From Octopus sinensis (Eukaryota), in contig NC_043004.1 in assembly GCF_006345805.1 (NCBI RefSeq), forward strand, positions 41,292,001 to 41,356,000: a stretch of DNA of 64,000 bases. The letters are read 5' to 3'. The notes beneath the pieces were generated by a model. It was given only the letters and a program-made list of their open reading frames with translations. It made no database searches and had not been told where the DNA came from. Both the position numbers and the translations under genes were made by a program. Positions 993-62,252 of the stretch are shown here, piece by piece; the first letter of the stretch is position 1; each line of letters starts with the position of its first letter.

Positions 993-1561
993 ATAATCTT
1001 ATATGCCCCCTCGGGGATCATGTGGATTCTAGTTGAGAATCACTGCTTTAGATGATGTGTACTCATAACACGTGATTCATCCGTGTAAGTTTATATCAAT
1101 TAGGGACTCAATCCTCGTATTTCTTGCAGGAATAAACTTAATCCTTGGCCCTTATTTATTGTTGAGTGGACTACGTGACTATTGAGAATCTTGCCAAATG
1201 AACAGACTGCAGCAACAATGGTAGCATGCGAACTACCGACCTTTTATGCCCGGCAATTGGACACTACCATCATAACAATCATCAAAACAATTTCAACCAG
1301 ATAACGAACCAACAAATCTTTACGTGGTCGTTCGACCTGCAAGAAATAACAACTAAATCTCACTCAAATCACCGTCAACCGTCTTAAGGTGACGTTAGAT
1401 AATATAGTCAGAAGGGAGTAACTTCGGTATAAGTACTGGAAGTACCGGATACATTTCAAGAAAGTGTTATTTTTATATATGAGGGGTTAGGGTTAGGGGT
1501 GGGAGAAAAGGGTTTCTGTTATCTTCAGAAATGTAAACAAAGCCACGTGTGTACTTATACC

Positions 1562-3416: not shown

Positions 3417-3839
3417 GGATCTTTTCGGTTTGAACGGCAGTTTTTTCTAGCGATGTCATATGAAATTGTCACCCATAATTATGACCCTAGTATCGATCTA
3501 TTGCATTTCAATCTGTTTTAGGGTTAGGGTTAGGGTGGGGGTGGGGGAAGGGTATCTTTTTTTTCTTCAGAAATGTAAATAAACCCAATCTGTTTCTTAA
3601 ACGAGGGACATATTCATATGGCACAGAATGTTTTTTACCTCAATAGACGTCAGTGATTGGTTTAAATTGCAGAAATTGAAGAAAAAAAACAACAAATATC
3701 TTACAAACTCTAGAATTTTCTCAATAAAGCCAAGAGAAAAAGATGTTTTATAAACACATTCTACCAGTATACGAAGTTTAAAATTTTTTAGTTACCTAGA
3801 AATTATGTTAAAAAACTGCCGTTCAAACCTAAAAGATCC
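3417..3839. mobile_element. GGATC-TIR MITE, short form A (423 bp), Merlin-like
   Basis: ~30-bp TIRs ggatcttttcggtttgaacggcagtttttt / aaaaactgccgttcaaacctaaaagatcc; internal ttaggg repeats; no TSD at this copy. Confidence 0.9.
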
Positions 3840-7890: not shown

Positions 7891-8097
7891 ACACAGAGGG
7901 GAAAAACAAGGATAGACAAAGGTATTAAGTCGATTACATCGACCCCAGTGCATAACTGGTATTTAATTTATCAATCCCGAAAGGATGAAAGGCAAAGTCG
8001 ACCTCGGCGGAATTTGAACTCACAACGTAACGGGAGACGAAATACGGCTACGCATTTCGCCCGGCGTGCTAACGTTTCTGCCAGCTCTCCGCCTTAA
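7891..8097 (-). mobile_element. SINE family X, 3' end clipped
   Basis: Reverse complement matches the aaggcggcgagctggcagaaacgttagc... consensus. Confidence 0.88.
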
Positions 8098-12807: not shown

Positions 12808-13234
12808 GGATCTTTTCGGTTTGAACGGCAGTTTTTTTCTAGCGGTGTCATATGAAATTGTCACCCATAATTATGACCCTAGTATCGATCTATTGCATTT
12901 CAATCTGTTTTGGGGTTAGGGTTAGTTAGGGTTAGGGGTAGGGTGGGGGTAAGGGTATCTTTTTTTCTTCACAAATGTAAATAAACTCAATCTGTTTCTT
13001 AAACGAGGGACATATTCATACGACACAGAATTTTTTTTTTACCTCAATAGACGTCACTGACTGGTTGAAATTGCAGAAAAAACAACAACAAATATCTTAC
13101 AAACTCTAGAATTTTCTCAATAAAGCCAAGAGAAAAAGATGTTTTATAAACACATTCTACCAGTATACGAAGTTTAAAATCTTTTAGTTACCTAGAAATT
13201 ATGTTAAAAACTGCCGTTCAAACCGAAAAGATCC
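12808..13234. mobile_element. GGATC-TIR MITE form A nested in a SINE, 8-bp TSD gaattagt
   Basis: TSD at 12800-12807 and 13235-13242; host SINE halves at ~12668-12807 and 13235-13320. Confidence 0.93.
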
Positions 13235-16574: not shown

Positions 16575-16988
16575 GAATCTTTTCGGTTTGAACGGCAGTT
16601 TTTTCTAGCTATGTCATATGAAATTGTCACCCATAATTATGACCCTAGAATCGATCTCTTGCATTTCAATCTCTTTTAGGGTTAGGGTTAGAGGTTGGGG
16701 AAGGGTATCTTTTTTTCTTCACAAATGTAAATAAACCCAATCTGTTTCTTAAACGAGGGACATATTCATACGGCACAGAATGCTTTTTACCTCAATAGAC
16801 GTCAGTGATTGGTTGAAATTGCAGAAAATGAAGAAAAAAACAACAAATATCTTACAAACTATAGAATTTTCTCAATAAAGCCAAGTGAAAAAATGTTTTA
16901 TAAACACAGTCTACCAGTATACGAAGTTTAAAATTTTTTAGTTACCTAGAAATTATGTTAAAAACTGCCGTTCAAACCGAAAAGATCC
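16575..16988. mobile_element. GGATC-TIR MITE form A, 8-bp TSD gatgcaag
   Basis: TSD at 16567-16574 and 16989-16996; left end reads gaatcttttcgg. Confidence 0.9.
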
Positions 16989-18958: not shown

Positions 18959-21900
18959 CCAACCCAAACCGCAGGAAGCAGCTCAGCCAGGTGGAAGAAC
19001 CGGGCGGCCCAGAAGGGACGGCTGAAGGTGTAGAGGTGACAGAGGCAGCGGAGGTGGCGGAGGAAACAAAGAGCGATGAAACGAAAAATGAGGAGGGGTG
19101 GTCAAAAATCACTAGGAAAAAAAGAAAAACTGAAACCACCCCTCCGAAAGTAAACCAAAAGAAAAAAGAGAGTCTTTGAACTCATTTATGGCCATTAAGG
19201 CCTCAAATAATAGACTGGGTAATGTGTTGGCAGCTATGGCCAAGGTAGAAAAAATTGGAAGAAAAAATGATTACATATTGTACAGAATAGGCCGAAAAGA
19301 TTACGGACGGATAAAGTCCGAATTTTTTCATGACGTGGGCCCCCTCAGAATGGATATATCATCACCATATATATTCGAGGGCCTGCGTCAGACTCCCCCA
19401 CGAGGCCCAGAAAAAGAGGAAAAAAATGAAGAAGAGAAAGGAAAAGTCGAACCACTGATATAAGGTAAGTCATGGATTACATTTATGTTGGTTGTTTAAA
19501 TGTGCGCGGCTTGGGATCAAGCTGGAAGCAAGGTCGCTTCCTTAATGATATCAGGTCGAGTAATTTGGATGTTATTGTTGCTACAGAAACCCGGTTAGAG
19601 GGGCCAAGAGGTCTACTCCCGCTGTTTGACGGCTACGAGAGTTTTTTTCTCTCCGGCCAGTCCTACAGGCGGGGGTGGGGTGTTGGTCCTATTAAAAAGA
19701 AACCGGGTTTTTGAGAAAAAGTTAATTTTTTCAGACCCAGAGGTAGGCTGGTCGTCATGGATTTGACGTTCAGTAACGGTAAAGTTATCAGACTGGTTGC
19801 AATTACGCACCCAACCAAAAAGGGCAAAGTGATTATTTTCGAGAACTGGAAAACTTTCTTGGTACTTCGCATTCATTAGTTGTGCTAGGAGACTTTAACA
19901 CAATTTGCAAAGCGGATGTAGATTGTGTTGGCTTGAGTCCAGATAGAAAAGGTAACATTGGCTTCCTGGAACTGCTAAGCCGCTTTGAGCTAGCAGATCC
20001 TTATAGGTTGGAATTTCCGAACGCTCCACTGTGGACATGGTCAAACAGCGACGGATCTTCCAGGTCATACATAGATAGGATACTAATTAGAAAAGTAGAC
20101 AGAAAAATAGCTAAGTGTCCACAGTTTTACCTGGTCAGCTACAGTGATCATAAAATGGTCACCTGTAAGCTTGACATAGATAAGGTTAAAAATAGAGGCT
20201 CCGGTTACTGGAAACTTAATACGTCCCTTTTGGCGATTAAGGAGTACAGAGACCGGATTAGGACTATAATTCAGAGGGCGCTATCTGGTGCCATCATTAA
20301 TAACAAATGGTGGTACGCCCTCAAGCGAGCCATCAAATTCGAGTCAATTAGATATAGCATAGGATTAGTGGCTAGAGAGGCTAGGAGGGAATCTACTCTA
20401 ATTAAGGAATTAGAGGAAGCCTTGAAAACTGGCTCTGCGGCTCAGGTGACGGCCAAGAGACTGGCGTTAAACCAGCACCTCGAGGCCAAACACATGGGCT
20501 GCATTGTCAGGGCTAGGATCCGCGCAATGGGTTGTGAAGGAATCAACGCCGTGAGATGGGCCCGAGTGGTGGAAGCTCAGCGTGGTAACGACGCCACGAT
20601 TCGATCTATGACGAACCAACAAGGGGAGTTGATAAACGAGCCCGAGGAGATGTGTGAGGCCTTTCAGGAGCACTTCGCTCAGCTTTTCGGTGAGTGCGGC
20701 GGACTGGATAGGAGGAGAGCCTTTACGGACCTCCTCGACGGGCTGCCGCGCTTATCGGGGCGAGATGCGGAGGGCTGTGAAGGGCCAATCACGCCTGGGG
20801 AGGTGGTTGAGGCGATGGCGGACTGCGGCGCGGGCAAGGCGCCGGGTTTAGATGGTCTACCCTATGAGTTATATAAGAGTATGCCAGACTTGTTCGGGCA
20901 CCTACTGGCAGAGGTCTATGCGAACTGGCAGCAGAACGGGTTCATACCCAGATCTGTGCGCCGGGGAGTAGTGACACTCGTCAGAAAGGACCCGAGCAAG
21001 GGGGAGTGCATTGATAATTTCAGGCCCATCACTCTGCTAAACACAGAGTTGAAGATTTTGGCCAAAGTGTTATCGAAAAGATTGGCGCGTGTCGTGGATG
21101 GTCTGATCGGGGAGGCACAGACATGTGCCGTTCCCGGCAGAACCATTCAGGATAATCTCCATCTTATGCGGTACACTATAGAGGGGTTTAATAGTGATTC
21201 TGGCAAGGGTGGGGCACTGGTCCATTTATATCAATCTAAAGCATTCGATAGGGTCGACCATCGTTACCTGGTATCTGCCCTGGCAGTTTGGGCTGGGCCT
21301 TGGCTTCCTCAGGTGGATTATCCAAATTTACGACAACATCGACTCGGTAGTTCGGGTGAACGGCTTCTTGTCGAAGCCGTTCAACATCAAGCGCTCGGTT
21401 CGTCAAGGGTGTCCGCTCTCCCCGCTTTTGTACGTGATGGCTCTTGAGCCATTACTGCGAAAACTGAGCGGCATCCCGAGACAGCCAGGTTGTGGAAAAT
21501 CGGCGTCAGCGTACGCGGATGACATCACCATCATCGTAACCGAAATGGATCACCTACGTAAAGTAGGCAAGGCCATAGAGGTTTACGAGACGGTGACAGG
21601 AGCAAAAGTTAATCGCGAAAAGTCAGTCGGCTTGCAACTCAGCACCTGGAGAGGCAAGTCGATGCCTCCTGACAGCGTCGTGGGACGTTGGACGGAGGCT
21701 CCGATTAAGTTGCTAGGGGTTTGGCTCGGTCCAGACCTCCAAATAGAGAAGAATTGGGGCGAGGTATCGAGCAGGGTGGCTGCAGTAACCAAGATCTGGT
21801 CTTGGCGGTGGCTATCCCTGAAAGGGCGGAGGTAGCCAATGTGTTTATCGCATCGGTTATCACCTACCGCCTTTCCGTCGTTCCTTGCCCTGATTCGTGG

Positions 21901-23100
21901 TTGATCAAGTTGGAAAGACAGCTCTTCTACTTCTTGTGGAAGGGCGGGAAACCACTTGTGAAACGCTCTACTTGCTGTCAACAACCGTTAAAGGGTGGGC
22001 TAGGGATGCCTTGGCTGATGATGCGCAGACATGCGCTGAGGTTAAGACATCTGTGGCTCTACCTGGATGGTGAACGGGTGTGGTCTCCGCTAGCAAAACT
22101 GATGTTTCCCAAGTTCACTAGTTTCGGTGGATGGGAAACCTGGCTGAATCGTAGATCGAAACTGGGCACATGGTACACGGAGTGTCGCAAGGCTCTCCTG
22201 CTATTCCGTCGCTCGGGCAACGCCTGCGGTGGGGGTTCCACCACATTCTTCTATAGAGGGTTGGTAGAGGCGGAATGTGAAGATACCTTGGGGGAAACCC
22301 TAGGTCTCGACGATAATCAGCTGGCCAGTCTGTTCCGACGTACGTTCGAGCCGAAGACACTGGACAACTTCCAGAAGTCTCTGGCATGGCAATGCTACAG
22401 AGGAGCTCTACCTGTTCGGGATAAACTCGCAAGGCACGGTGGCCAAGACAGTCCGATATGTCCAAGATGCGAGCGGGATAGGGAAACCGTCCCGCACGCT
22501 ATTGTTCATTGTTCGGTTGTGTCTGAGGTGTGGGTTTATGCCGAACAGCTGTTGTCAAGCACAAGAAGAGTACAGCTATCGACTGAGTCTATTACAAAAA
22601 TTGACCCACCAGATTTCCTCGCGAAAGAAGGTAAGAATTGTTTTCTCGTTGTAGTAGCAATTGCGAAAGAGGTGATATAGAAGACGAGAATGAAAGGTTT
22701 ACGGTCAGGTAAGTTCATATCCGGCCCTGGTTTGATGAATTACTTCATCTTTCACCTGAAAAGGAAGATAGGGCTGGAGAGAAAATGCCTGACTAAGAGA
22801 GTGTATGAAGAACGATGGAAAGATGTAGCACGAAAGTTGCGAGTGGATGATACCACATAAATGTAAAACTAGATGAAACCAAAGTATCAGTGGGGAGGCG
22901 GGGCTCGTGGGGTCCGAGCTAAACCCGCTCCCACTCCATCCGTAATGTCTTCCGGTCTGTTCCTCATTCGATTTTTGATATTTTTGTAATTTTTGTAAAT
23001 TTTAAAATTCGCCATTTTTGTAAACCCATTCGTTAATCTGACCCCACATCAGATTGTATTGTCCCCTCTATGTTCGCCCCTTGTGGGTAATAATAAAATA
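18959..23100 (+). mobile_element. 5'-truncated Tx1/L1-clade LINE (partial ORF1, disrupted ORF2, 3' UTR)
   Basis: Direct repeat attcatatg at 18950-18958 and 23100-23108 (TSD); APE and RT motifs; A-rich end. Confidence 0.92.
19472..22860 (+). pseudogene. Tx1-clade ORF2 (APE endonuclease, RT, CCHC) with several frameshifts and one premature stop
   Basis: LNVRGL, ETRL, LGDFN, YIDRIL, SDH, GYWKLNTSLL, KAPGLDG, RPITLLN, KAFDRVDH, RQGCPLSP, YADD, CPRC..ETVPH...C; in-frame TAG at 22678-22680 where Trp is expected. Confidence 0.92.
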
Positions 23101-26380: not shown

Positions 26381-26698
26381 CTTTTCAGTTTGAACGGCAG
26401 TTTTTAACATAATTTGTTGTTTTTTTCTTCAATTTCTGCAATTTCAACCAATCAATTACGTCTATTGAGTTAAAAAGCATTATGTGCCGTATGAATATGT
26501 CCCTCGTTTAAGAAACAGATTGGGTTTATTTACATTTGTGAAGAAGAAAAAAAAGATACCCTCCCACCCCCACCCCTAACCCTAACCCTAACCCTTAAAC
26601 AGATTGAAATGCAATAGATCGATACTAAGGTCATAATTATGGGTGACAATTTCATATGACACCGCTAGAAAAAACTGCTGTTCAAACCGAAAAGATCC
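26381..26698. mobile_element. GGATC-TIR MITE form A, internally deleted, reverse orientation
   Basis: Matches the consensus; one terminus clipped. Confidence 0.88.
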
Positions 26699-29324: not shown

Positions 29325-29788
29325 TCTCACTCACTCTCTCCTGCTTTCTAAAACGTGACTCTCTCTCTCTCTCACACTTTCAATATGAATCATTCTCACT
29401 TCTTTCCTACTGTCAATGTGAAATTCTCTTTTAAAAACCTCTGTCTATATACGTACACAGACATACATATACTCTCAAATTATCTACTTATGATATTTTA
29501 TAAGTTTCTTTCTCTTTCTCTTTCGCCATTTGTAATATCAGTGTATTCGTTTTCATATTGTATATTATCTTATGAAAGTAATTTCCGGCCATTTTATTAT
29601 AGTTATTTTTTCTCTTTCTCTTTCCTTCTAAACTCTGGAAAAGTATCTCGTTTCGGTTATTCGTTGTGTATTTTGCATTTTATGAAATGTTAAGGTCGTT
29701 CATCCTATAATCGTCACACGACATATTTTTAAACAAAGCTTCCCCACCCCTAAAAACACCAATTAAGTAAATATACGACTAAAATTTC

Positions 29789-30207
29789 GGTTTGAACGGC
29801 AGTTTTTAACATAATTTCTAGGTAACTAAAAAATTTTAAACTTCGTATACTGGTAGAATGTGTTTATAAAGCATCTTTTTCTCTTGGCTTTATTGAGAAA
29901 ATTCTATACTTTGTAAGATATTTGTTGTTTTTTTTCTTCAATTTCTGCAATTTCAACCAATCGATGACGTCCATTGAGGTAAAAAAAAAAAGCATTGTGT
30001 GCCGTATGAAAATGTCCTTCGTTTAAGAAACAGATTGGGTTTATTTACATTTGTGAAGAAAAAAAAAGATACCCTTCCCCTAACCTTAACTAACCCTAAC
30101 CCTAAAACAGATTGAAATGCAATAAAATCGATACTAGGGTCATAATTATGGGTGACAATTTCATATGACACCGCTAGAAAAAACTGCCGTTCAAACCGAA
30201 AAGATCC
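29789..30207. mobile_element. GGATC-TIR MITE form A, reverse orientation, TSD aaaatttc
   Basis: aaaatttc at 29781-29788 and 30208-30215; first 10 bp of the TIR missing at a tttc microhomology. Confidence 0.88.
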
Positions 30208-31667: not shown

Positions 31668-32528
31668 ATGTATAAATATGTATGTATGTATGTATAAATA
31701 TGTATGTATGTATGTATAAATATGTATGTATGTGTTATGTGTAGTTTGGGTTCTAATGGGAAAGACAACCAAATGAAAACCATTGTTATTGTTACGTGTT
31801 TATTTACTTCTCATGTTACACGGACTCGACATTCAGCGTAGTAATACATTATATACTTTACACACAGTTTGTACTGTTCACTAACAAAATAGTGCCAAGA
31901 GTGGGGATGTAGTTTGGCATACGTAAACACATAGATATGAATGTGTAACAGTATGTACGTATAAATATGCATGTATGTATGTATGTATGTATGTATGTAC
32001 ACACAATAGACGTTCATCTAAATTAGCAAACGATGCCGATCTTTATTCATATTCAGTGACGTAGAGACTGTAAATATCTTAGCTGACGCACAAGATGCAA
32101 TTATAAACATTATTTACAGGTGTTGACTATTATGCTTAATTAAACTGACTTAATTAGTTTTATGCTTATAAAAATAAACATGAGAGTCTGGGGTTAATGA
32201 AACCGAATTAATTGCTGTTCCATACTATATTTGATAATCGTTGTTTATATATGCTGACTATTATGAATAATTACACGTGTTTGATGGCAGTGTAAGACAA
32301 TTAAGAGAGTTTAAAAGAAAAAAAGAAAGGGGGACAATTTTTTAGAAATTGTTTAAGAAATTTCAAAAACCGCTTAAAGAAAAAAAATACTTTAAAATAT
32401 ATCTTGATAAAAAAAAATATATTAGAAACACTGAGCTAAGTTGCTAGTAAGAAAATCTAAGAGATAAAAGTAGTAACTATTCTGAAAAGTAATGTCTGTT
32501 ACAACTTCAACATAGCAACAAATATTAG

Positions 32529-32952
32529 GGATCTTTTCGGTTTGAACGGCAGCTTTTTCTAGCAGTGTCATATGAAATTGTCACCCATAATTATGACCCT
32601 AGTATCGATCTATTGCATTCCAATCTGTTTTAGGATTAGGGTTAGAGGTGGGGGGGAGGGGTATCATTTTTTCTTCAGAAATGTAAATAAACCCGGATCT
32701 TTTCGGTTTGAACGGCAGTTTTTTAAAATAATTTCCACGTAACTAAACACTTTTAAACTTCGTATACTGGTAGAATGTGTTTATAAACATATTTTTCTCT
32801 TCGCTTTATTGAGAAAATTCTATAGTTTGTAAGATATTTACTGTTTTTTTCTTCAATTTCTGCAATTTCAACCAATCAATGACGTCTATTGAGGTGAAAA
32901 CATTCTGTGCCGTATGAAAATGTCCCTCGTTTAAGAAACAGATTGGGTTTAT
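32529..32952. mobile_element. GGATC-TIR MITE form A with its right half inverted
   Basis: Left half ends at ataaaccc (32687-32694); right TIR starts at 32695; inverted segment ends at gggtttat (32945-32952). Confidence 0.9.
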
Positions 32953-34490
32953 GGACCTTTTCCTTTTGAACGGCAGTTTTCAACACAATTTCTAGTTAAC
33001 TAAACACTTTTAAACTTCGTATACTGGTAGAATGTGTCTCAAAATAAAACATTTGGATCTTTTCCTTTTGAACGGCACATGTCAACACAATTTCTAGTTA
33101 ACTAAACACTTTAAAACTTCATATACTGGTAAAATGTGTCAAAATAAAACATTTTTTTCGCTTGGCTTTCTTGATAAAATTGTAATTCGTTTGTTTAACG
33201 TAGTTTAATTTTTCGAATTTTAACTAATCAATTGCCTCTAATTGAGCTAAAATCATTTGCTGCGTCTAAAACTGAGACAACATCCTGTCACTAATCCTAA
33301 CCTTCACCCTAAATTTTAGCCTTTGGTTTTTTTTCTTTTTCTTAATTGTTAAATTAATTTAAGGATAACAATTAAGAAAAAAAAAAACGAAAGGCTAAAA
33401 CGAAAGCAATGGAAAATAATTTAAACAATTAACAAGCAAAATAATTCTATAATTTTATACACACGTTTTCCGTACGTATATATAACGAAAGGCTAAGACG
33501 AAAGCAACAACTCAAAACAAAAACAAAATGAATAATTTTAGACACACGCGTAACAATTAAATTAATTTAACAATTCGAAAGGCTAAAATTTAGGGTTAGG
33601 GTTAGGGTTAGTGACAGGATGTTGTCTCAGTTTTAGACGCAGCAAATGATTTTAGCTCAATAGAGGGGATAAGATTGGTTAAAATTCGAAACATTAAACA
33701 ACGTTAAACAAACAAATTACAATTTTCTCAATAAAGCCAAGAGAAAAAAATGTTTTATTTTGACACATTCTACCAGTATACGAAGTTTTAATGTGTTTAG
33801 TTAACTAGAATTTGTGTTGACATGTGCCTATCAAAAGGAAAAGATCCAAACATTTTTTTCTATTGGCTTTCTTGAAAATTGTAATTTGTAAGTTTAACGT
33901 AGTTTAATTTTTCGAATTTTAACCAATCAATGGCCTCTATTGAGCTAAAGTCATTTGCTGTGTCTAAAACTGAGACAACATCCTGTCACTAACCCTAACC
34001 CTAAATTTTAGCCTTTCGAATTGTTAAATTAATTTAATTGTTACGCGTGTGTCTAAAATTATTCATTTTGTTTTTTGTTTTGTTTTTTTTTAGTTTTTGT
34101 TTTGAGATACACGTGTATTGTTTAAACTATTTTCCATTGCTTAAGAAAAAAAAACGAAAGGCTAAAACGAAAGCAATGGAAAATAATTTAAACAATTAAC
34201 AAACAAAATAATTCTATAATTTTATACACACGCTTTCCGTATGTAAACATAATAGCGACAGGATGTTGTCTCAGTTTTAGACGCAGCAAATGATTTTAGC
34301 TCAATAGAGGCCATTGATTGGTTAAAATTAGAAAAATTAAACTATGTTAAACTTACAAATTTCAATTTCCTCAAGAAAGCCAAGAGAAAAAAATGTTTTA
34401 TTTTGACACATTCTACCAGTATACGAAGTTTAAAAGTGTTTAGTTTACTAGAAATTGTGTTGAAAACTGCCGTTCAAAAGGAAAAGATCC
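32953..34490. mobile_element. Long fold-back form B of the GGATC family (host copy B1)
   Basis: ggaccttttccttttgaacggcag...ctgccgttcaaaaggaaaagatcc; long inverted arms; interrupted by B2. Confidence 0.9.
33055..33847. mobile_element. Fold-back form B copy (B2) nested in B1, 8-bp TSD aaacattt
   Basis: TSD at 33047-33054 and 33848-33855; inverted arms of roughly 270 bp. Confidence 0.93.
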
Positions 34491-37091
34491 AGGGTTTCTG
34501 TTATCTTCAGAAATGTAAACAAAGTCACATGTGTACCTATACCGAAGCATCGCCAAAAATCATGTTTTTGGGACTAGTGTATATCACAAAAACATTTGGC
34601 TGAAGTAACATCAATAACGCAGCAAGGAAGATCCCACAGTCTCATGTCATCGTGTTCCACTTAAGAATAAGATTGATATTAAGAAAATGGCGTCAACATC
34701 ATGTGACCAAAACTATGTGGAAACATATAAGGTATGGCTTCGAAACTATTAAGTTTCTTGTGCAAATGCATTTACCATAACTTCAGATTTATCCAAGCCT
34801 TGTGAGTAGATAAAAACTATATAGAAAGCCATCGGGTGGATTATACAATTTCATCCATTTCACAAAAACTGAATCTATAACTGCACTCTTTAGCAAAGGC
34901 TGAATTATTCTAGAATTACACACTTGTATTTTGTATAAAACCAAATTTTACGCTGGAATAATTTAAATGGGGATAAAAGCGATAAAAAATAAATAACAGT
35001 TTGAGAACCACGGCTGTAGAATGTAAATATATTATTCACATATGATTTCCTATTCAGTTTTGTTTTGTGTTGTGCTGTGTAATATAAAAGCAAGACTCCA
35101 TACTGAAATTGCACAAACCTATACTCTTTAGAAGGAAAATATTTAACAAAAGAATTCGTATATTATACAGCATTTAAAATCAACCCTCCAACTCAATCCT
35201 CCTCTTTTCCTCAACATACTTCTTCATATTTCTCATACATAGCTCTGAGTTCAAATTCCTTTAAAGATCGCTTTTGCCCAACCTAAACATTAACTCATCA
35301 ACTCAAAAAAAAACATCTTTATCTGATCACATATGGTCTTTAAAATCCTCTAATATTTCATATACCATATCTTAGAAAATCGTTTTAAAAGTTAAATCAT
35401 ATCAATACAACAACAAACCACGCCAACTATGGGCTTATGAGTTCAACGAAAAACTATTTGCAAAGTTAAAACTATTTCTGTATTAAGTCCTTCCACACAA
35501 CAGATATTTAAAAAAATACGTATATGCCAAAAGGCATATTTGGGGTACTTAAGTGTGCTCATAACTTAGTGTTTGCTTCTTCCATTAGTATAAGTATTTC
35601 ATTTATTTCATACCGTATTTATCGCTGACGAGGAGTAAATTCTTATGAATTAACTCTGAAATTGGGACCGATACGATGATAACGGAATTTTTTAGAAATT
35701 TCTGTCGGCTTACTTCGAGACGCGTGCTTATAGTGATAAATTATATGGTTATTGCCGATTTGTCTATTTTCAGCATATTTGGCATTAGAATTTATTTCTT
35801 TTGCCCTTGTTTATAAGTTTTATATATATAACGTCCACACATAGACGCGCGTGTGCATACATACACACACACATACATACGTACGTACATACACAATTCT
35901 TGAGAGACAAGAAGAGGGAAAACTCAACCAGCCAGTGTTTATAACTCAAAAAGTAAGTATGAAAAAAGGAAGAATAAGTGACGTCACAAACAATCTCTAA
36001 CAGTGACTGTAATCCGACGAAACGCCTACAGAGAATTTGAACGTCTGACCTGTTAAGATGACTGACGAATGGGAAAATATTTGAAATTACTTCATCATTT
36101 ATTCTTCATTTTTTTTATTTTTTAGTTTAATTTATTTTATTTTTTATCTTCGTGGTTTGAACGTAGAAAAAAAGGATAAAACATATTTCTTGATTAAACG
36201 ATAGAACATCTACATTAGACATCAGCAACCTTTATCGAGAAGCGAGCCGCATGAGTTGTGGCTCATCATCAGGCGGGCCGCACAACTAAAAACGTATATA
36301 AATAAAAAAATTAAAAAGATCAGGGTAATTTTTTGTTAGACTAATTATTCTGACCGCAGTTTGCTCGATGTAGATTCCATATATTCGGTCACTTGGCTAG
36401 AAATAACAGCATATGTCCTTCAAACTACCAGACTCTATTGTCCTTTAAAAGGAAGAAAACATTGTAAGATGTAGTCCTAGATATATATATATATATATAC
36501 AAAAAGACGGGATGGTCACGCATGACATGTCTTTGACCTTGGGAAGGAATCTTTTGAAAATGAAACTCCAATAAAATTTATTTACATTAAAAATACAAAA
36601 AAAAAAATTTAATTAAAACATTGAAATAGTTTAAGGATTCGAATATCGATCTCAATTTTAATTGTATCCGAATTCCATTTAAGTTACAATATATGCAGTT
36701 TCTTTTTAAAATTCAGCCCCACCTATTTTGTTTACTTAGATTCTCGTACAAAAACTGGAATTGAAATTCTTCACTTTTGGAATGCATATAAGCATCAAAT
36801 TATCTCTTAATACCAACCTAACCATTCCAGTAATGAAGTCACTGCGGGAAAAGTTTACCACTTGCTTGATGAACGAATGAAAAAACAAGAGAGAGAGAGG
36901 AAGAAAGGGATAAAATGAGAGAGCTAGAGAAAAAAAGAAAGATGATGAAAGAAAGAGCCAAATTAAAGAAAGGGACAAAAGAGAAAGAGAGAGACAAAGG
37001 GATAGAGGTCGATGTACAGAAATATAGTGAGAGAGAAAGAGAGAGAGGGGGTACAGAAAAGAAAAAAACTATAATCTTGAAAAATCCTTTC

Positions 37092-37482
37092 GGATCTTTT
37101 CGGCAGTTTTTAACATAATTCCTAGGTAACTAAAAAAATGTTAAACTTCGTATACTGGTAGAATGTGGTTATAAAACATCTTTTTATCTTGGCTTTATTG
37201 AGAAAATTCTATGGTTTGTAAGATATTTGTTGTTTTTTCTTCAATTTCTGCAATTTCAACCAATCACTGAAGTCTATTGAGGTAAAAAAAAACATTCTGT
37301 GCCGTATGAATATGTCCCTCGTTTAAGAAACAGATTGGGTTTATTTACATTTGTGAAGAAAAAAAGATACCCTCCCCCTACCCCTAACCCTAAAAGAGAT
37401 TGAAATGCAATAGGTCGATACTATGGGTGACAATTTCAAATGACACCGCTAGAAAAAACTGCCGTTCAAACCGAAAAGATCC
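37092..37482. mobile_element. GGATC-TIR MITE form A, reverse orientation, small deletions
   Basis: Both termini present; no TSD. Confidence 0.88.
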
Positions 37483-40759: not shown

Positions 40760-40986
40760 GGATCTTTTCGGTTTGAACGGCAGAATTATGACCCTAGTAT
40801 CGATCTATTGCATTTCAATCTGTTTTAGGGTTAGGGTTAGAGGTTGGGGAAGGGTATCTTTTTTTCTTCACAAATGTAAATAAACCCAATCTGTTTCTTA
40901 AACGAGGGACATATTCATACGGCACAGAATGCATTTTACCTCAATAGACGTGGGGAGAAGGGTATCTTTTTTTCTTCACAAATGTT
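40760..40986. mobile_element. Truncated and deleted GGATC-TIR MITE inserted in a SINE head
   Basis: gagctggcagaatcgttagcatgcag|ggatcttttcgg; internal segment duplicated at 40951-40986. Confidence 0.8.
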
Positions 40987-41807: not shown

Positions 41808-42227
41808 GGATCTTTTCGGTTTGAACGGCAGTTTTTTCGAGCGGTGTCTTATGAAATTGTCACCCATAATTATGACCCTAGTATCGATCTATTGCATTTC
41901 AATCTGTTTTAGGATTAGGGTTAGGGGTGAGGAGGAAGGGTATCTTTTTTTTCTTCAGAAATGTAAATAAACCCAATCTGTTTCTTAAACGAGGGACATA
42001 TTCATACGGTACAGAATGGTTTTCTTTACCTCAATAAACGTCAGTGATTGGTTGAAATTGCAGAAATTGAAGAAAAAAAACAACAAATATCTTACAGACA
42101 ATAGAATTTTCTCAATAAAGGCAAGTGAAAAAGATGTTTTATAAACACATCCTACCAGTATACGAAGTTTTAAATTTTTTAGTTACCTAGAAATTATGTT
42201 AAAAACTGCCGTTCAAACCGAAAAGAT
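41808..42227. mobile_element. GGATC-TIR MITE form A, TSD aagattag
   Basis: aagattag at 41800-41807 and 42223-42230, the latter overlapping the clipped right TIR. Confidence 0.88.
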
Positions 42228-42295
42228 TAGCATGACCCCAGAGCAAAGATGACACACAAATTTGTGCAGTGTTCCATATTCTTTTTTTATAAGTG

Positions 42296-44165: not shown

Positions 44166-44604
44166 GGATCTTTTCGGTTTGAATGGCAGTTTTTAACATA
44201 ATTTCTAGGTAACTAAAAAATTTAAAACTTCGTATACTGGTAGAATGTGTTTATAAAACATCTTGGCGAAGTTTCATTGCCAACATCTTTTTCTCTTGGC
44301 TTTATTGAGAAAATTCTATTGTCTGTAAGATATTTGTTGTTGTTTTTTCTGCAATTTCTGCAATTTCAACCAATCAATGACGTCCATTGGGGTAAAAAAA
44401 ACATTCTGTGCCGTATGTATATGTCCCTCGTTTAAGAAACAGATTGGGTTTATTTACATTTGTGAAGAAAAATAGATACCCTTCCCCCCACCCTTAACCC
44501 TAAAACAGATTGAAATGCAATAGATCGATACTAGGGTCATAACTATGGTTGACAATTTCATATGACACCACTAGAAAAAACTACCGTTCAAACCGAAAAG
44601 ACCC
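44166..44604. mobile_element. GGATC-TIR MITE form A, reverse orientation, carrying a 17-bp insertion
   Basis: Consensus match; ggcgaagtttcattgcc at 44265-44281 between aacatctt repeats. Confidence 0.88.
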
Positions 44605-59436: not shown

Positions 59437-59843
59437 GGATCTTTTCGGTTTGAACGGCAGTTTTTAACATAATTTCCACATAACTAAACACTTTTAAACT
59501 TCATATACTGGTAGAATGTGTTTATAAAACATCTTTTTCTACAGTTTGTAAGATATTTGTTGTTATTTTTCTTCAATTTCTGCAATTTCAACCAATCAAT
59601 GACGTCCATTGAGGTAAAAAAACATTCTGTTCCGTATGAATATGTCCCTCTTGTAAAAAACAGATTGGGTTTATTTACATTTGTGAAGCAAAAAAGATAC
59701 CCTTTCCCCCACCCCTAACCCTATCCCTAACCCTAAGCCTAAAACAGATTGTAATGCAATAAATCGATACTAAGGTCATAATTATGGGTGACAATTTCAT
59801 ATGACACTGCTAGAAAAAACTGCCATTCAAACTGAAAAGATCC
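59437..59843. mobile_element. GGATC-TIR MITE form A, reverse orientation, imperfect 8-bp TSD
   Basis: cctttttg (59429-59436) versus cgtttttg (59844-59851). Confidence 0.88.
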
Positions 59844-60375: not shown

Positions 60376-60794
60376 GGATCTTTTCGGTTTGAACGGCAAT
60401 TTTTTCTAGCGGTGTCATATGAAATTGTCACCCATAATTATGGCCCTAGTATCTATCTATTGCATTTCAATCTATTTTAGGGTTAGGGTTAGGGGTGGGG
60501 GAAAGGGTATCTTTTTTTGTTCACAAATGTAAATAAACCCAATCTGTTTCTTAAACGAGAGACATATTCATACGGCACAGAATGTTTTTTTTACCTCAAT
60601 AGACGTCAGTGATTGGTTGAAATTGCAGAAATTGAAGTAAAAAAACAGCAAATATCTTACAAACTATAGAATTTTCTCAATTAAGTTAAGAGGAAAAGAT
60701 GTTTTATAAACACATTCTACCAGTATACGAAGTTTAAAATTTTTTAGTTACCTAGAAATTATGTTAAAAACTGCCGTTCAAACCGAAAAGATCC
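60376..60794. mobile_element. GGATC-TIR MITE form A
   Basis: Both TIRs intact; no TSD. Confidence 0.9.
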
Positions 60795-61217: not shown

Positions 61218-62252
61218 GGATCTTTTCCTTTTGAACGGCACATGTCAACACAATTTCTAGTTAACTAAACACTTTAAAACTTTGTATACTGGTAGAATGT
61301 GTCAAAATGAAACATTTTTTCTCTTGGCTTTCTTGAGAAAATTGTAATTTGTTTGTTTAACGTAGTCTAATTTTTCGAATTTTAACCAATGAATCGCCTC
61401 TAGTGAGCTAAAATAATTTGCTATGTCTAAAACTGAGACAACATCCTGTTACTAACCCTAACCCTCACCCTAACCCTAAATTTATTTTCTTTATTGTTAA
61501 ATTAATTTAATTGTTACACGGAAAGCGTGTGTATAAAATTATAGAATTATTTTGTTTGCTAATTGTTTAAATTATTTTCCATTGCTTTCGTTTTAGCCTT
61601 TCGTTTTTTTTTTTCTTACTTGTTATCCTTAAATTAATTTAACAATTAAGAAAAATAAAAAACGAAAGGCAAATATTTAGGGTTAGGGTGAGGGTGAGGG
61701 TGAGGTTGTTGTCTCAGTTTTACACGCAGCAAATGATTTTAGCTCAATTAGAGGCGATTCATTGGTTAAAATTTGGGATCTTTTCCTTTTGAACGGCACA
61801 TGTCAACACAATTTCTAGTTAACTAAACACTTTTAAACTTCGTATACTGGTAGAATGTGTTTATAAAGCATCATTTTTTCTTGGCTTTATTGAAAAAATT
61901 CTATATGTTGTAACATATTTCCACTTTAATTTCAAGCATTTCGGCAATTTTAACCAATCGCTGACCTCCATTTGGGGTGAAAACATTCCGTGCTGTATGA
62001 ATATGTCCCTCGTTTAAGAAACAGATTGGGTTTATTTACATTTGTGAAGAAAAAAAGATACCCTTCCCCTAACCCTAACCCTAACCCTAACTCTAACTCT
62101 AAATCTAAAATAGATTGAAATGCAATAGATCGATACTAGGGTTATAATTATGGATGACAATTTCATACGACACTATTGCATTTCAATCTGTTTTAGATTT
62201 AGGGTTAGATTTAGGATTAGCATTAGAGTTAGGGGTGGGGGAAGGGTATCTT
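61218..62252. mobile_element. Composite: truncated form B (61218-61775), then a B-end/A-body hybrid (from 61776) ending in a fold-back duplication
   Basis: Second ggatcttttcc at 61776; ~62175-62252 is the reverse complement of ~62050-62146. Confidence 0.85.

What the first reader, a model, noticed from the sequence alone, without database searches (positions are those of the whole stretch)
32529..34490. Inversion with the signature of reversed-ends (alternative) transposition between two neighbouring MITEs
Seen: element A runs normally to ataaaccc (32687-32694), then its right TIR follows immediately (32695) and reads inward to gggtttat (32945-32952, the reverse complement of the same 8 bp), directly abutting the TIR of element B1 (32953). 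Exactly 8 bp are duplicated in inverted orientation, equal to the family TSD length. Established: in maize Ac/Ds, facing ends of two nearby elements can be used together, losing the spacer and inverting the segment up to the target. Inference: the A right end and B left end transposed jointly into A's own body. Several TSD-less copies (3417, 37092, 44166, 60376) would fit similar flank rearrangements, so the family may be restructuring this locus.
Basis: partly seen in the sequence, partly recalled or inferred. Interest (0 to 1): 0.75.

Follow-up and report, generated by a model that had tools for sequence, protein, structure and literature searches.

The report
MITE half flipped by two-element transposition
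In a cephalopod-like genome, the right 258 bp of a small non-coding transposon is inverted in place, with the sequence scar expected when a transposase joins the facing ends of two neighbouring elements and inserts them into one of them; the mechanism is known and the example is clean but has no evident consequence.

Summary
Element A belongs to a roughly 419-bp MITE family with 29-bp TIRs and 8-bp TSDs.

- A runs collinearly with the family consensus from 32529 to 32694, ending in ATAAACCC.
- A's own right terminus follows at 32695. The rest of A reads backwards to GGGTTTAT at 32945-32952.
- GGGTTTAT directly abuts the left terminus of B1 at 32953. B1 is a 737-bp long-armed relative that carries a nested copy, B2.

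Un-inverting 32695-32944 restores a gap-free 416-bp family member. A simulated reversed-ends transposition reproduces the observed 701 bases exactly. Among 351 pairs of terminus flanks in the window, this is the only inverted 8/8 match. The outer flanks of A (AATATTAG) and B1 (AGGGTTTC) have no partners, as expected if the spacer between the elements was lost.

NAHR, nested insertion and macrotransposition each make a prediction that fails. An in-place flip of B1 plus A's right part is disfavoured but not excluded.

Three things remain untested: the ancestral allele, read-level support, and the transposase, which is not in the window.

Verdict: a natural footprint of a known mechanism in a new family and host. 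Interest is moderate.

The parts
32521..32528 (+). Left flank of element A (AATATTAG), an orphan TSD copy with no partner
   Evidence: No matching 8-mer next to any other terminus in the window. This is expected if the right-hand copy lay in the lost spacer.
32529..32694 (+). Element A, left part (consensus 1-165), starting with the 29-bp left TIR
   Evidence: 157/166 identical to the consensus. Collinear with all family copies.
32687..32694 (+). Target-site copy 1, ATAAACCC (consensus 158-165), abutting A's right terminus
32695..32952 (-). Element A, right part, inverted (consensus 419 back to 158). The right TIR is now at 32695-32723, reading rightwards.
   Evidence: 245/262 identical to the consensus. 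The subterminal sequence is of the right-end type.
32945..32952 (-). Target-site copy 2, GGGTTTAT (reverse complement of copy 1), abutting B1's left terminus
   Evidence: The only inverted 8/8 flank match among 351 terminus pairs
32953..33054 (+). B1, first 102 bp including the left TIR (GGACCTTTTCCTTTTGAACGGCAG)
   Evidence: Aligns with the left ends of B2 and B3. 21/24 identical to A's right TIR.
33055..33847 (+). B2, a 793-bp long-armed element nested in B1, with 8-bp TSD AAACATTT (33047-33054 and 33848-33855)
   Evidence: Arms of about 309 nt, 88% complementary (I1). TSD shown. Removing B2 and one TSD copy restores a collinear B1.
33856..34490 (+). B1, remainder, up to its right TIR (ends GATCC at 34490)
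   Evidence: (I2, I4)
34491..34553 (+). Right flank of B1. The orphan 8-mer AGGGTTTC opens a copy of an unrelated short repeat, here called R.
   Evidence: 94% identical to 1509-1561 and 1751-1813. Alignment.

Best explanation
This is a single alternative (reversed-ends type) transposition event.

Ancestral state (inferred): an intact element A of about 416 bp lay at 32529, flanked by AATATTAG. Some distance downstream lay B1, a 737-bp long-armed relative with nearly the same TIR, inserted in an R repeat and flanked by AGGGTTTC.

Event (inferred): a transposase encoded elsewhere paired A's right terminus with B1's left terminus, which faced each other across the spacer. It cut both. The released spacer, carrying one TSD copy of each element, was lost. 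The two liberated 3' ends were inserted into an 8-bp staggered target, ATAAACCC, inside A itself, about 250 bp from A's right end. A's right terminus joined the left half of the target and B1's left terminus joined the right half. This inverted the 258-bp segment between the target and A's right end. Gap repair then left the 8-mer at both termini in inverted orientation.

Shown by the sequence: the anatomy, the exact 8-bp inverted duplication at two TIR termini, collinearity after un-inversion, the orphan outer flanks, and 8-bp TSDs in both families.

Inferred: the ancestral arrangement, the existence and loss of a spacer, that one transposase serves both families, and that both ends were on the same chromatid rather than on sister chromatids.
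For: - Consensus mapping places 1-165 forward and 419 to 158 inverted, sharing exactly consensus 158-165.
- Un-inverting gives a 416-bp element aligned without a gap across the junction to 13 family copies.
- A generic reversed-ends inversion applied to that ancestor reproduces window 32400-33100 exactly, 701/701.
- The pair is the only inverted flank match among 351 terminus pairs, against 0.13 chance matches of any kind expected.
- The TSD is 8 bp in both family A and family B.
- A's right TIR and B1's left TIR are 21/24 identical. One of the three differences is private to B1's left end.
- A's left flank and B1's right flank have no partners.
- The two halves of A are similarly diverged from the consensus, 94.6% and 93.5%.
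- The structure matches the published RET inversion signature (PMC8225341; PMC2775673).
Against: - No ancestral or empty allele could be retrieved. Two junction-ORF look-ups and two metagenome scans found nothing.
- There is no read-level validation of the assembly.
- No DDE transposase is present in the window, so the superfamily and the sharing of one enzyme by A and B are unknown.
- A subfamily-variant test for a single-element origin of the two halves was inconclusive.
- One coincidence is not explained by the model. B1's right flank is a copy of repeat R, which is homologous to the A module whose 3' end was the target.
- Four of nine A copies lack TSDs, so the orphan flank of A is weaker evidence than it looks.
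Confidence: 0.74

Rival explanations
1. B1 first inserted normally into an intact A at ATAAACCC, making a direct 8-bp TSD. The block made of B1 plus A's right part, bounded by B1's left terminus and A's right terminus, was then excised and religated into the same gap in the opposite orientation.
For: It also yields ATAAACCC|A-right-TIR ... GGGTTTAT|B1, and it needs no lost spacer. B1's arms are near-palindromic, so its original orientation cannot be read from its ends.
Against: - It predicts A's own right flank, a second AATATTAG, to the right of 34490. The observed flank is AGGGTTTC within an R repeat. This argument is weakened because 4 of 9 A copies lack TSDs.
- It needs footprint-free religation at two termini, which is not a known transposase reaction.
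- It needs two events rather than one.
Confidence: 0.07
2. Multi-step history of nested standard insertions plus deletions. A second A copy, in minus orientation, inserted into a first A copy at ATAAACCC. B1 then inserted into that second copy at the same 8-mer. Deletions later removed everything else.
For: Nested insertion is common here, as B2 in B1 shows. Internal deletions and duplications occur in other copies: 26381, 40760, 61776.
Against: - It needs the same 8-bp site to be hit twice independently, roughly 1 in 400 per event.
- It needs at least one deletion ending exactly at a terminus.
- No remnant of the missing halves is present.
- B1's right flank is 94% R, not A.
- The direct TSDs expected around a nested insert are absent.
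Confidence: 0.04
3. Assembly artefact: reads from different MITE copies were joined wrongly in a repeat-dense region.
For: The window holds more than 20 copies or fragments of related elements. No reads are available to check the assembly.
Against: - Misjoins occur inside shared sequence. Here both junctions sit at the exact last base of a TIR, with a TSD-length inverted duplication.
- The junction is not a palindrome, so it is not a missed-adapter foldback.
- There are no Ns or gaps in the window.
Confidence: 0.06
4. The structure arose elsewhere, by whatever mechanism, and reached this site as a mobile composite or as part of a fixed subfamily. The unit would be 32529-34490 or 32695-34490, both of which have outward-facing termini.
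For: Both candidate units carry correctly oriented TIRs (I16 and I20). Macrotransposition of linked elements is documented for Ac/Ds; it is cited in PMC2775673.
Against: - There is no TSD around either unit: AATATTAG versus AGGGTTTC, and ATAAACCC versus AGGGTTTC.
- The junctions are unique in the window.
- This rival would move the event to another place. It would not change how the structure was made.
Confidence: 0.05
5. Transposase-independent inversion: ectopic recombination (NAHR) between inverted homologous segments, or replication template switching or NHEJ.
For: B arms are homologous to A's right half at 79-87%. A foldback-type junction with no TSD signature exists at 62173.
Against: - NAHR gives breakpoints inside homologous sequence, chimeric copies and exchanged TSDs, and no new TSD (PMC8225341; PMC2775673).
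- Here both breakpoints are at exact element termini and a new 8-bp duplication is present.
- Random breakage would not place both ends on TIR termini with an overlap equal to the family TSD length.
Confidence: 0.03

Closest known systems
Reversed-ends transposition (RET) of maize Ac/Ds and fAc (Zhang & Peterson 2004; Sharma et al. 2021, PMC8225341)
   Same: Facing termini of two neighbouring cut-and-paste elements are used together. The segment from one terminus to the target is inverted. The DNA between the elements is lost. An 8-bp TSD sits at the two termini at the breakpoints.
   Different: - The target here lies inside one of the two participating elements, so only 258 bp of the element itself is inverted and no host DNA.
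- The elements are non-autonomous MITEs of unknown superfamily in a cephalopod-like genome.
- This is an old footprint in a genome, not an event recovered from a known progenitor.
Hybrid element insertion of Drosophila P elements (Gray, Tanaka & Sved 1996; summarised in PMC2775673)
   Same: Two ends that do not belong to one element insert together. The TSD is 8 bp. Nearby inversions, deletions and duplications result.
   Different: Hybrid element insertion uses ends on sister chromatids or homologues of the same insertion. Here the ends belong to two different elements. Whether they lay on the same chromatid cannot be told.
Inside-out (inverse) transposition of bacterial composite transposons such as Tn10/IS10 (from my own knowledge)
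   Same: The inner ends of two flanking elements act together on a nearby target and give deletion or inversion products, with loss of the material between the ends.
   Different: That system is prokaryotic IS chemistry with a 9-bp TSD. The resemblance is in mechanism only, not in family.
Galileo / Foldback long-TIR elements and their natural inversions in Drosophila (PMC2775673)
   Same: The B family has arms of about 300 bp out of 740-790 bp. Nested and rearranged copies cluster together.
   Different: Galileo inversions carry the NAHR signature of exchanged TSDs and chimeric copies. This locus carries a new TSD at exact termini.

Membership tests
RET-type alternative transposition product (inversion class) | Both breakpoints coincide with the exact termini of two different TIR elements | tested here: met
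   32694|32695 is A's right terminus and 32952|32953 is B1's left terminus
RET-type alternative transposition product (inversion class) | A duplication of family TSD length flanks the two termini, in inverted orientation | tested here: met
   ATAAACCC / GGGTTTAT, 8/8. The family TSD is 8 bp. It is the only such pair among 351.
RET-type alternative transposition product (inversion class) | The inverted segment runs from one terminus to the target and is otherwise collinear with the uninverted sequence | tested here: met
   Un-inversion restores a gap-free 416-bp family member. The simulation reproduces the observed sequence exactly.
RET-type alternative transposition product (inversion class) | The inter-element fragment is lost, and the original TSD partners of both elements are missing | tested here: inconclusive
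   The outer flanks AATATTAG and AGGGTTTC are orphans, as predicted. The ancestral allele with the spacer could not be obtained, and 4 of 9 A copies lack TSDs anyway.
RET-type alternative transposition product (inversion class) | A cut-and-paste transposase recognises both termini | not testable with these tools
   There is no DDE transposase ORF in the window. The TIRs are 21/24 identical. Both families make 8-bp TSDs.
hAT superfamily (non-autonomous member) | 8-bp TSD | tested here: met
hAT superfamily (non-autonomous member) | Short hAT-type TIRs, a weak nTnnnnAn target consensus, and an autonomous partner with a hAT transposase | tested here: inconclusive
   The TIR is 29 bp and starts GGATC. 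The seven TSDs seen do not follow nTnnnnAn. No autonomous partner was found. P, Merlin and other superfamilies with 8-bp TSDs remain possible (from my own knowledge).
NAHR inversion between inverted TE copies | Breakpoints within homologous copies, chimeric copies, exchanged TSDs and no new TSD | tested here: not met
   The breakpoints are at exact termini and a new 8-bp duplication is present. Criteria are taken from PMC8225341 and PMC2775673.
Simple nested insertion | Direct TSD on both sides of the insert, with the host element continuing collinearly after it | tested here: not met
   Met for B2 in B1 (AAACATTT). Not met for 32695-34490 or for B1: the flanks ATAAACCC or GGGTTTAT versus AGGGTTTC do not match.

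The most novel reading that the evidence does not exclude
Pairing of ends from different elements may be frequent for this transposase and a main force reshaping MITE clusters in this genome. It could account for the many TSD-less copies (4 of 9), for truncated elements abutting foreign termini (61776), and possibly for the origin of the long-armed B family, whose two arms both derive from the A-type right end. This locus would then be the one event whose scar happens to be fully readable.
Probability: 0.15. Interest if true: 0.6.

Novelty: new member of a known kind. Interest (0 to 1): 0.4.

Why it matters
Alternative transposition is well documented experimentally in maize, rice and Drosophila. 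Fixed natural footprints with a fully readable scar are rarely reported, especially for MITEs in animals.

This locus gives sequence-level evidence that a still unidentified cut-and-paste transposase of a cephalopod-like genome could synapse ends of two different non-autonomous elements from two related families.

It also gives a simple search rule for counting such events genome-wide: same-orientation termini whose outer 8-mers are reverse complements.

The event itself alters only repeat DNA and has no evident functional consequence.

Tried and rejected
1. Looking for the same locus or junction elsewhere.
- Exact-protein look-ups of the two ORFs that span the junctions found nothing.
- A degenerate pattern matching both the canonical and the junction form, and the 24-nt TIR, gave no match in the metagenome collection.
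- The best named LINE hits are cephalopod: Argonauta hians at 49-69% and Acanthosepion pharaonis at about 40%. The host genome itself does not appear to be in the protein collection. No outside comparison was therefore possible.

2. Testing a single-element origin of the two halves through shared subfamily variants was inconclusive. The left half is nearest c3417 and c41808. The right half shares a few variants with c59437.

3. Macrotransposition of 32695-34490 is rejected because there is no direct TSD.

4. The 23-37-bp similarity between 32669-32694 and 34491-34527 is not a long TSD. The right copy is a separate repeat, R, 94% identical to two other R copies.

5. BLAST extended the inverted half to 32960. 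This is a spurious extension into B1's TIR.

6. I considered a protein-database search with MITE-derived ORFs and dropped it. Canonical copies carry only 20-41-aa ORFs in that frame, so a null result would say nothing.

7. No tRNA gene and no transposase domain were found in the window.

Full report
**What the window is.** The window is eukaryotic DNA. It is AT-rich (62% A+T), has no Ns, and is full of microsatellites, LINE fragments and SINE-like repeats. The 521-aa LINE ORF at 19882-21447 has its best named relatives in cephalopods: Argonauta hians at 49-69% and Acanthosepion pharaonis at about 40%. The host is therefore probably a cephalopod whose own genome is not in the protein collection.

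**The MITE family.** The TIR GGATCTTTTCGGTTTGAACGGCAG occurs 26 times within three mismatches, against 0 expected. Nine full-length copies of 391-439 bp give a 419-bp consensus with 29-bp TIRs.

**The TSD is 8 bp.**
- GAATTAGT at 12808/13234
- GATGCAAG at 16575/16988
- 7/8 at 59437/59843
- AAAATTTC (29779) and AAGATTAG (41808), each still visible beside a small terminal deletion between short direct repeats

**Check of the observation.** BLAST of the consensus places consensus 1-165 at 32529-32694 in forward orientation (157/166 identical). It places consensus 419 back to 158 at 32695-32952 in inverted orientation (245/262 identical). The left piece ends ...GTAAATAAACCC. The next base is the first base of a right-end-type TIR. 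The inverted piece ends ...AAACAGATTGGGTTTAT. The next base is the first base of B1's TIR, GGACCTTTTCCTTTTGAACGGCAG. The two pieces share exactly consensus 158-165. Joining 32529-32694 to the reverse complement of 32695-32944 gives a 416-bp element that aligns to 13 family copies without a gap across the junction.

**The neighbour.** B1 is not a simple MITE. The B family is 740-790 bp long with inverted arms of about 300 bp. These arms are homologous (79-87%) to the right end of A. B2 (33055-33847) is nested in B1 with a perfect 8-bp TSD, AAACATTT, at 33047-33054 and 33848-33855. Removing B2 and one TSD copy restores a collinear 737-bp B1, 32953-33054 plus 33856-34490. Family B therefore moves with the same TSD length as family A. 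Its TIR differs from A's at two family-specific positions. B1's left end has one further private change (21/24 identical).

**Is it more than chance?** I took the outer 8-mers of 27 termini and compared all 351 pairs. Left against right flanks were compared directly, and same-side flanks as reverse complements. Apart from four ordinary TSDs and one chance 7/8 match, the only hit is the inverted 8/8 match of 32695 with 32953. About 0.13 hits of any kind are expected. Under random breakage of an element, an overlap of exactly the TSD length would occur about once in 400. Both breakpoints falling on the last base of a TIR would be far rarer. Both junction sequences are unique in the window.

**Mechanism.** The anatomy is that of an inversion made by reversed-ends alternative transposition. 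[quoted passage not shown] TSDs flank the TE termini at the breakpoints (PMC8225341). The same scheme is summarised for neighbouring copies on one chromatid in PMC2775673. I coded a generic reversed-ends event with these steps:
- cut at A's right terminus and at B1's left terminus;
- discard the spacer;
- make an 8-bp staggered cut at ATAAACCC inside A;
- join A's right terminus to the left target half and B1's left terminus to the right target half.

The product equals window 32400-33100 at 701 of 701 positions. The model also predicts that both elements have lost one TSD partner. A's left flank AATATTAG and B1's right flank AGGGTTTC indeed have no partners. What is special here is that the target lay inside one of the two participating elements. 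Only 258 bp of element A is inverted, and no host DNA.

**Rivals.**
- *NAHR between inverted homologous segments* predicts breakpoints inside homology, chimeric copies, exchanged TSDs and no new duplication. None of these is seen.
- *Nested insertions plus deletions* needs the same 8-mer to be hit twice and deletions ending exactly at termini.
- *Macrotransposition of 32695-34490* predicts a direct TSD, but ATAAACCC and AGGGTTTC differ.
- *B1 nested in A, followed by a flip of the block made of B1 plus A's right part*, reproduces the junctions. It predicts AATATTAG to the right of 34490 and needs footprint-free religation. It is disfavoured but not excluded, because 4 of 9 A copies lack TSDs.
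- *Misassembly* would not create a TSD-length inverted duplication at two exact termini. Only reads can exclude it.

**What I could not do.** No allele or orthologue was reachable. No transposase is in the window, so the superfamily stays open. An 8-bp TSD fits hAT, P, Merlin and others, and the seven TSDs do not follow the hAT target consensus. The subfamily-variant test for a common origin of the two halves was inconclusive.

Copies 3417, 37092, 44166 and 60376 do have unrelated flanks. None of these flanks pairs with any other terminus flank in the window, directly or inverted. With about one copy every 3-4 kb, unequal recombination between copies is at least as good an explanation. This part is unsupported, not refuted.

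**Unexplained.** B1's right flank, 34491-34553, is a copy of a short repeat, R. It is 94% identical to 1509-1561 and 1751-1813. R is homologous to the A-family module at consensus 105-165, whose 3' end is the target 8-mer. As a result, 32695-34490 is bracketed by diverged direct copies of TTCTTCAGAAATGTAAA(T/C)AAA. No model needs this. It may be chance, or a target preference for such modules.

**Verdict.** The reversed-ends interpretation is the best explanation (about 0.74). It is a natural example of a known mechanism in a new family and host. Interest is moderate (0.4).

Noticed in passing
window 34491-34553, 1484-1561, 1746-1813; A-family consensus 105-165: A short repeat, R (AGGGTTTCTGTTATCTTCAGAAATGTAAACAAAGYCACRTGTGTACYTATACCGAAGSATCGC), occurs three times. 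It is homologous to an internal module of the A MITE family, including the telomere-like TTAGGG run upstream in one copy. The MITE family seems to have captured this module, or to share it. One R copy is B1's right flank.
   Followed up: partly
window 1504-1561 and 1746-1803, insert about 1562-1745: A 58-bp perfect direct repeat flanks a SINE-like insert of about 184 bp that ends in (GAATTTGAACTCA)3. This would be an unusually long target duplication for a retroposon, or else a local tandem duplication. The same SINE-like sequence recurs elsewhere, for example near 7900-8050.
   Followed up: partly
window 61218-62252: This is another rearranged cluster. A B-type element (B3) is truncated in its right arm at about 61775 and directly abuts the terminus of an element with a B-type TIR and an A-type body. 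That element runs consensus 419 to 37, then flips at 62173 to forward consensus 82-138. The junction is of foldback type and has no TSD signature.
   Followed up: partly
window 40760-40985 and 26381-26698: These are damaged A copies. Copy 40760 has consensus 1-24 joined to 58-231, followed by a second copy of 120-155. Copy 26381 lacks consensus 291-380. Both look like error-prone repair or slippage products.
   Followed up: no
window 3417-3839, 37092-37482, 44166-44604, 60376-60794: Four of nine full-length A copies have completely unrelated 8-bp flanks. No partner flank exists in the window. At 44604 a C-rich filler of about 14 bp precedes a poly-A that could be the displaced TSD.
   Followed up: partly
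window 29779-30207 and 41808-42229: Two copies keep their TSDs (AAAATTTC, AAGATTAG) but have lost 10 and 7 terminal or flank bases between short direct repeats (TTTC, AAGAT). These small deletions would immobilise the copies.
   Followed up: no
window 19882-22680: A degraded LINE with apurinic-endonuclease remnant, RVT_1 and zf-RVT domains spread over three overlapping frames. Its nearest named relatives are in Argonauta hians.
   Followed up: partly
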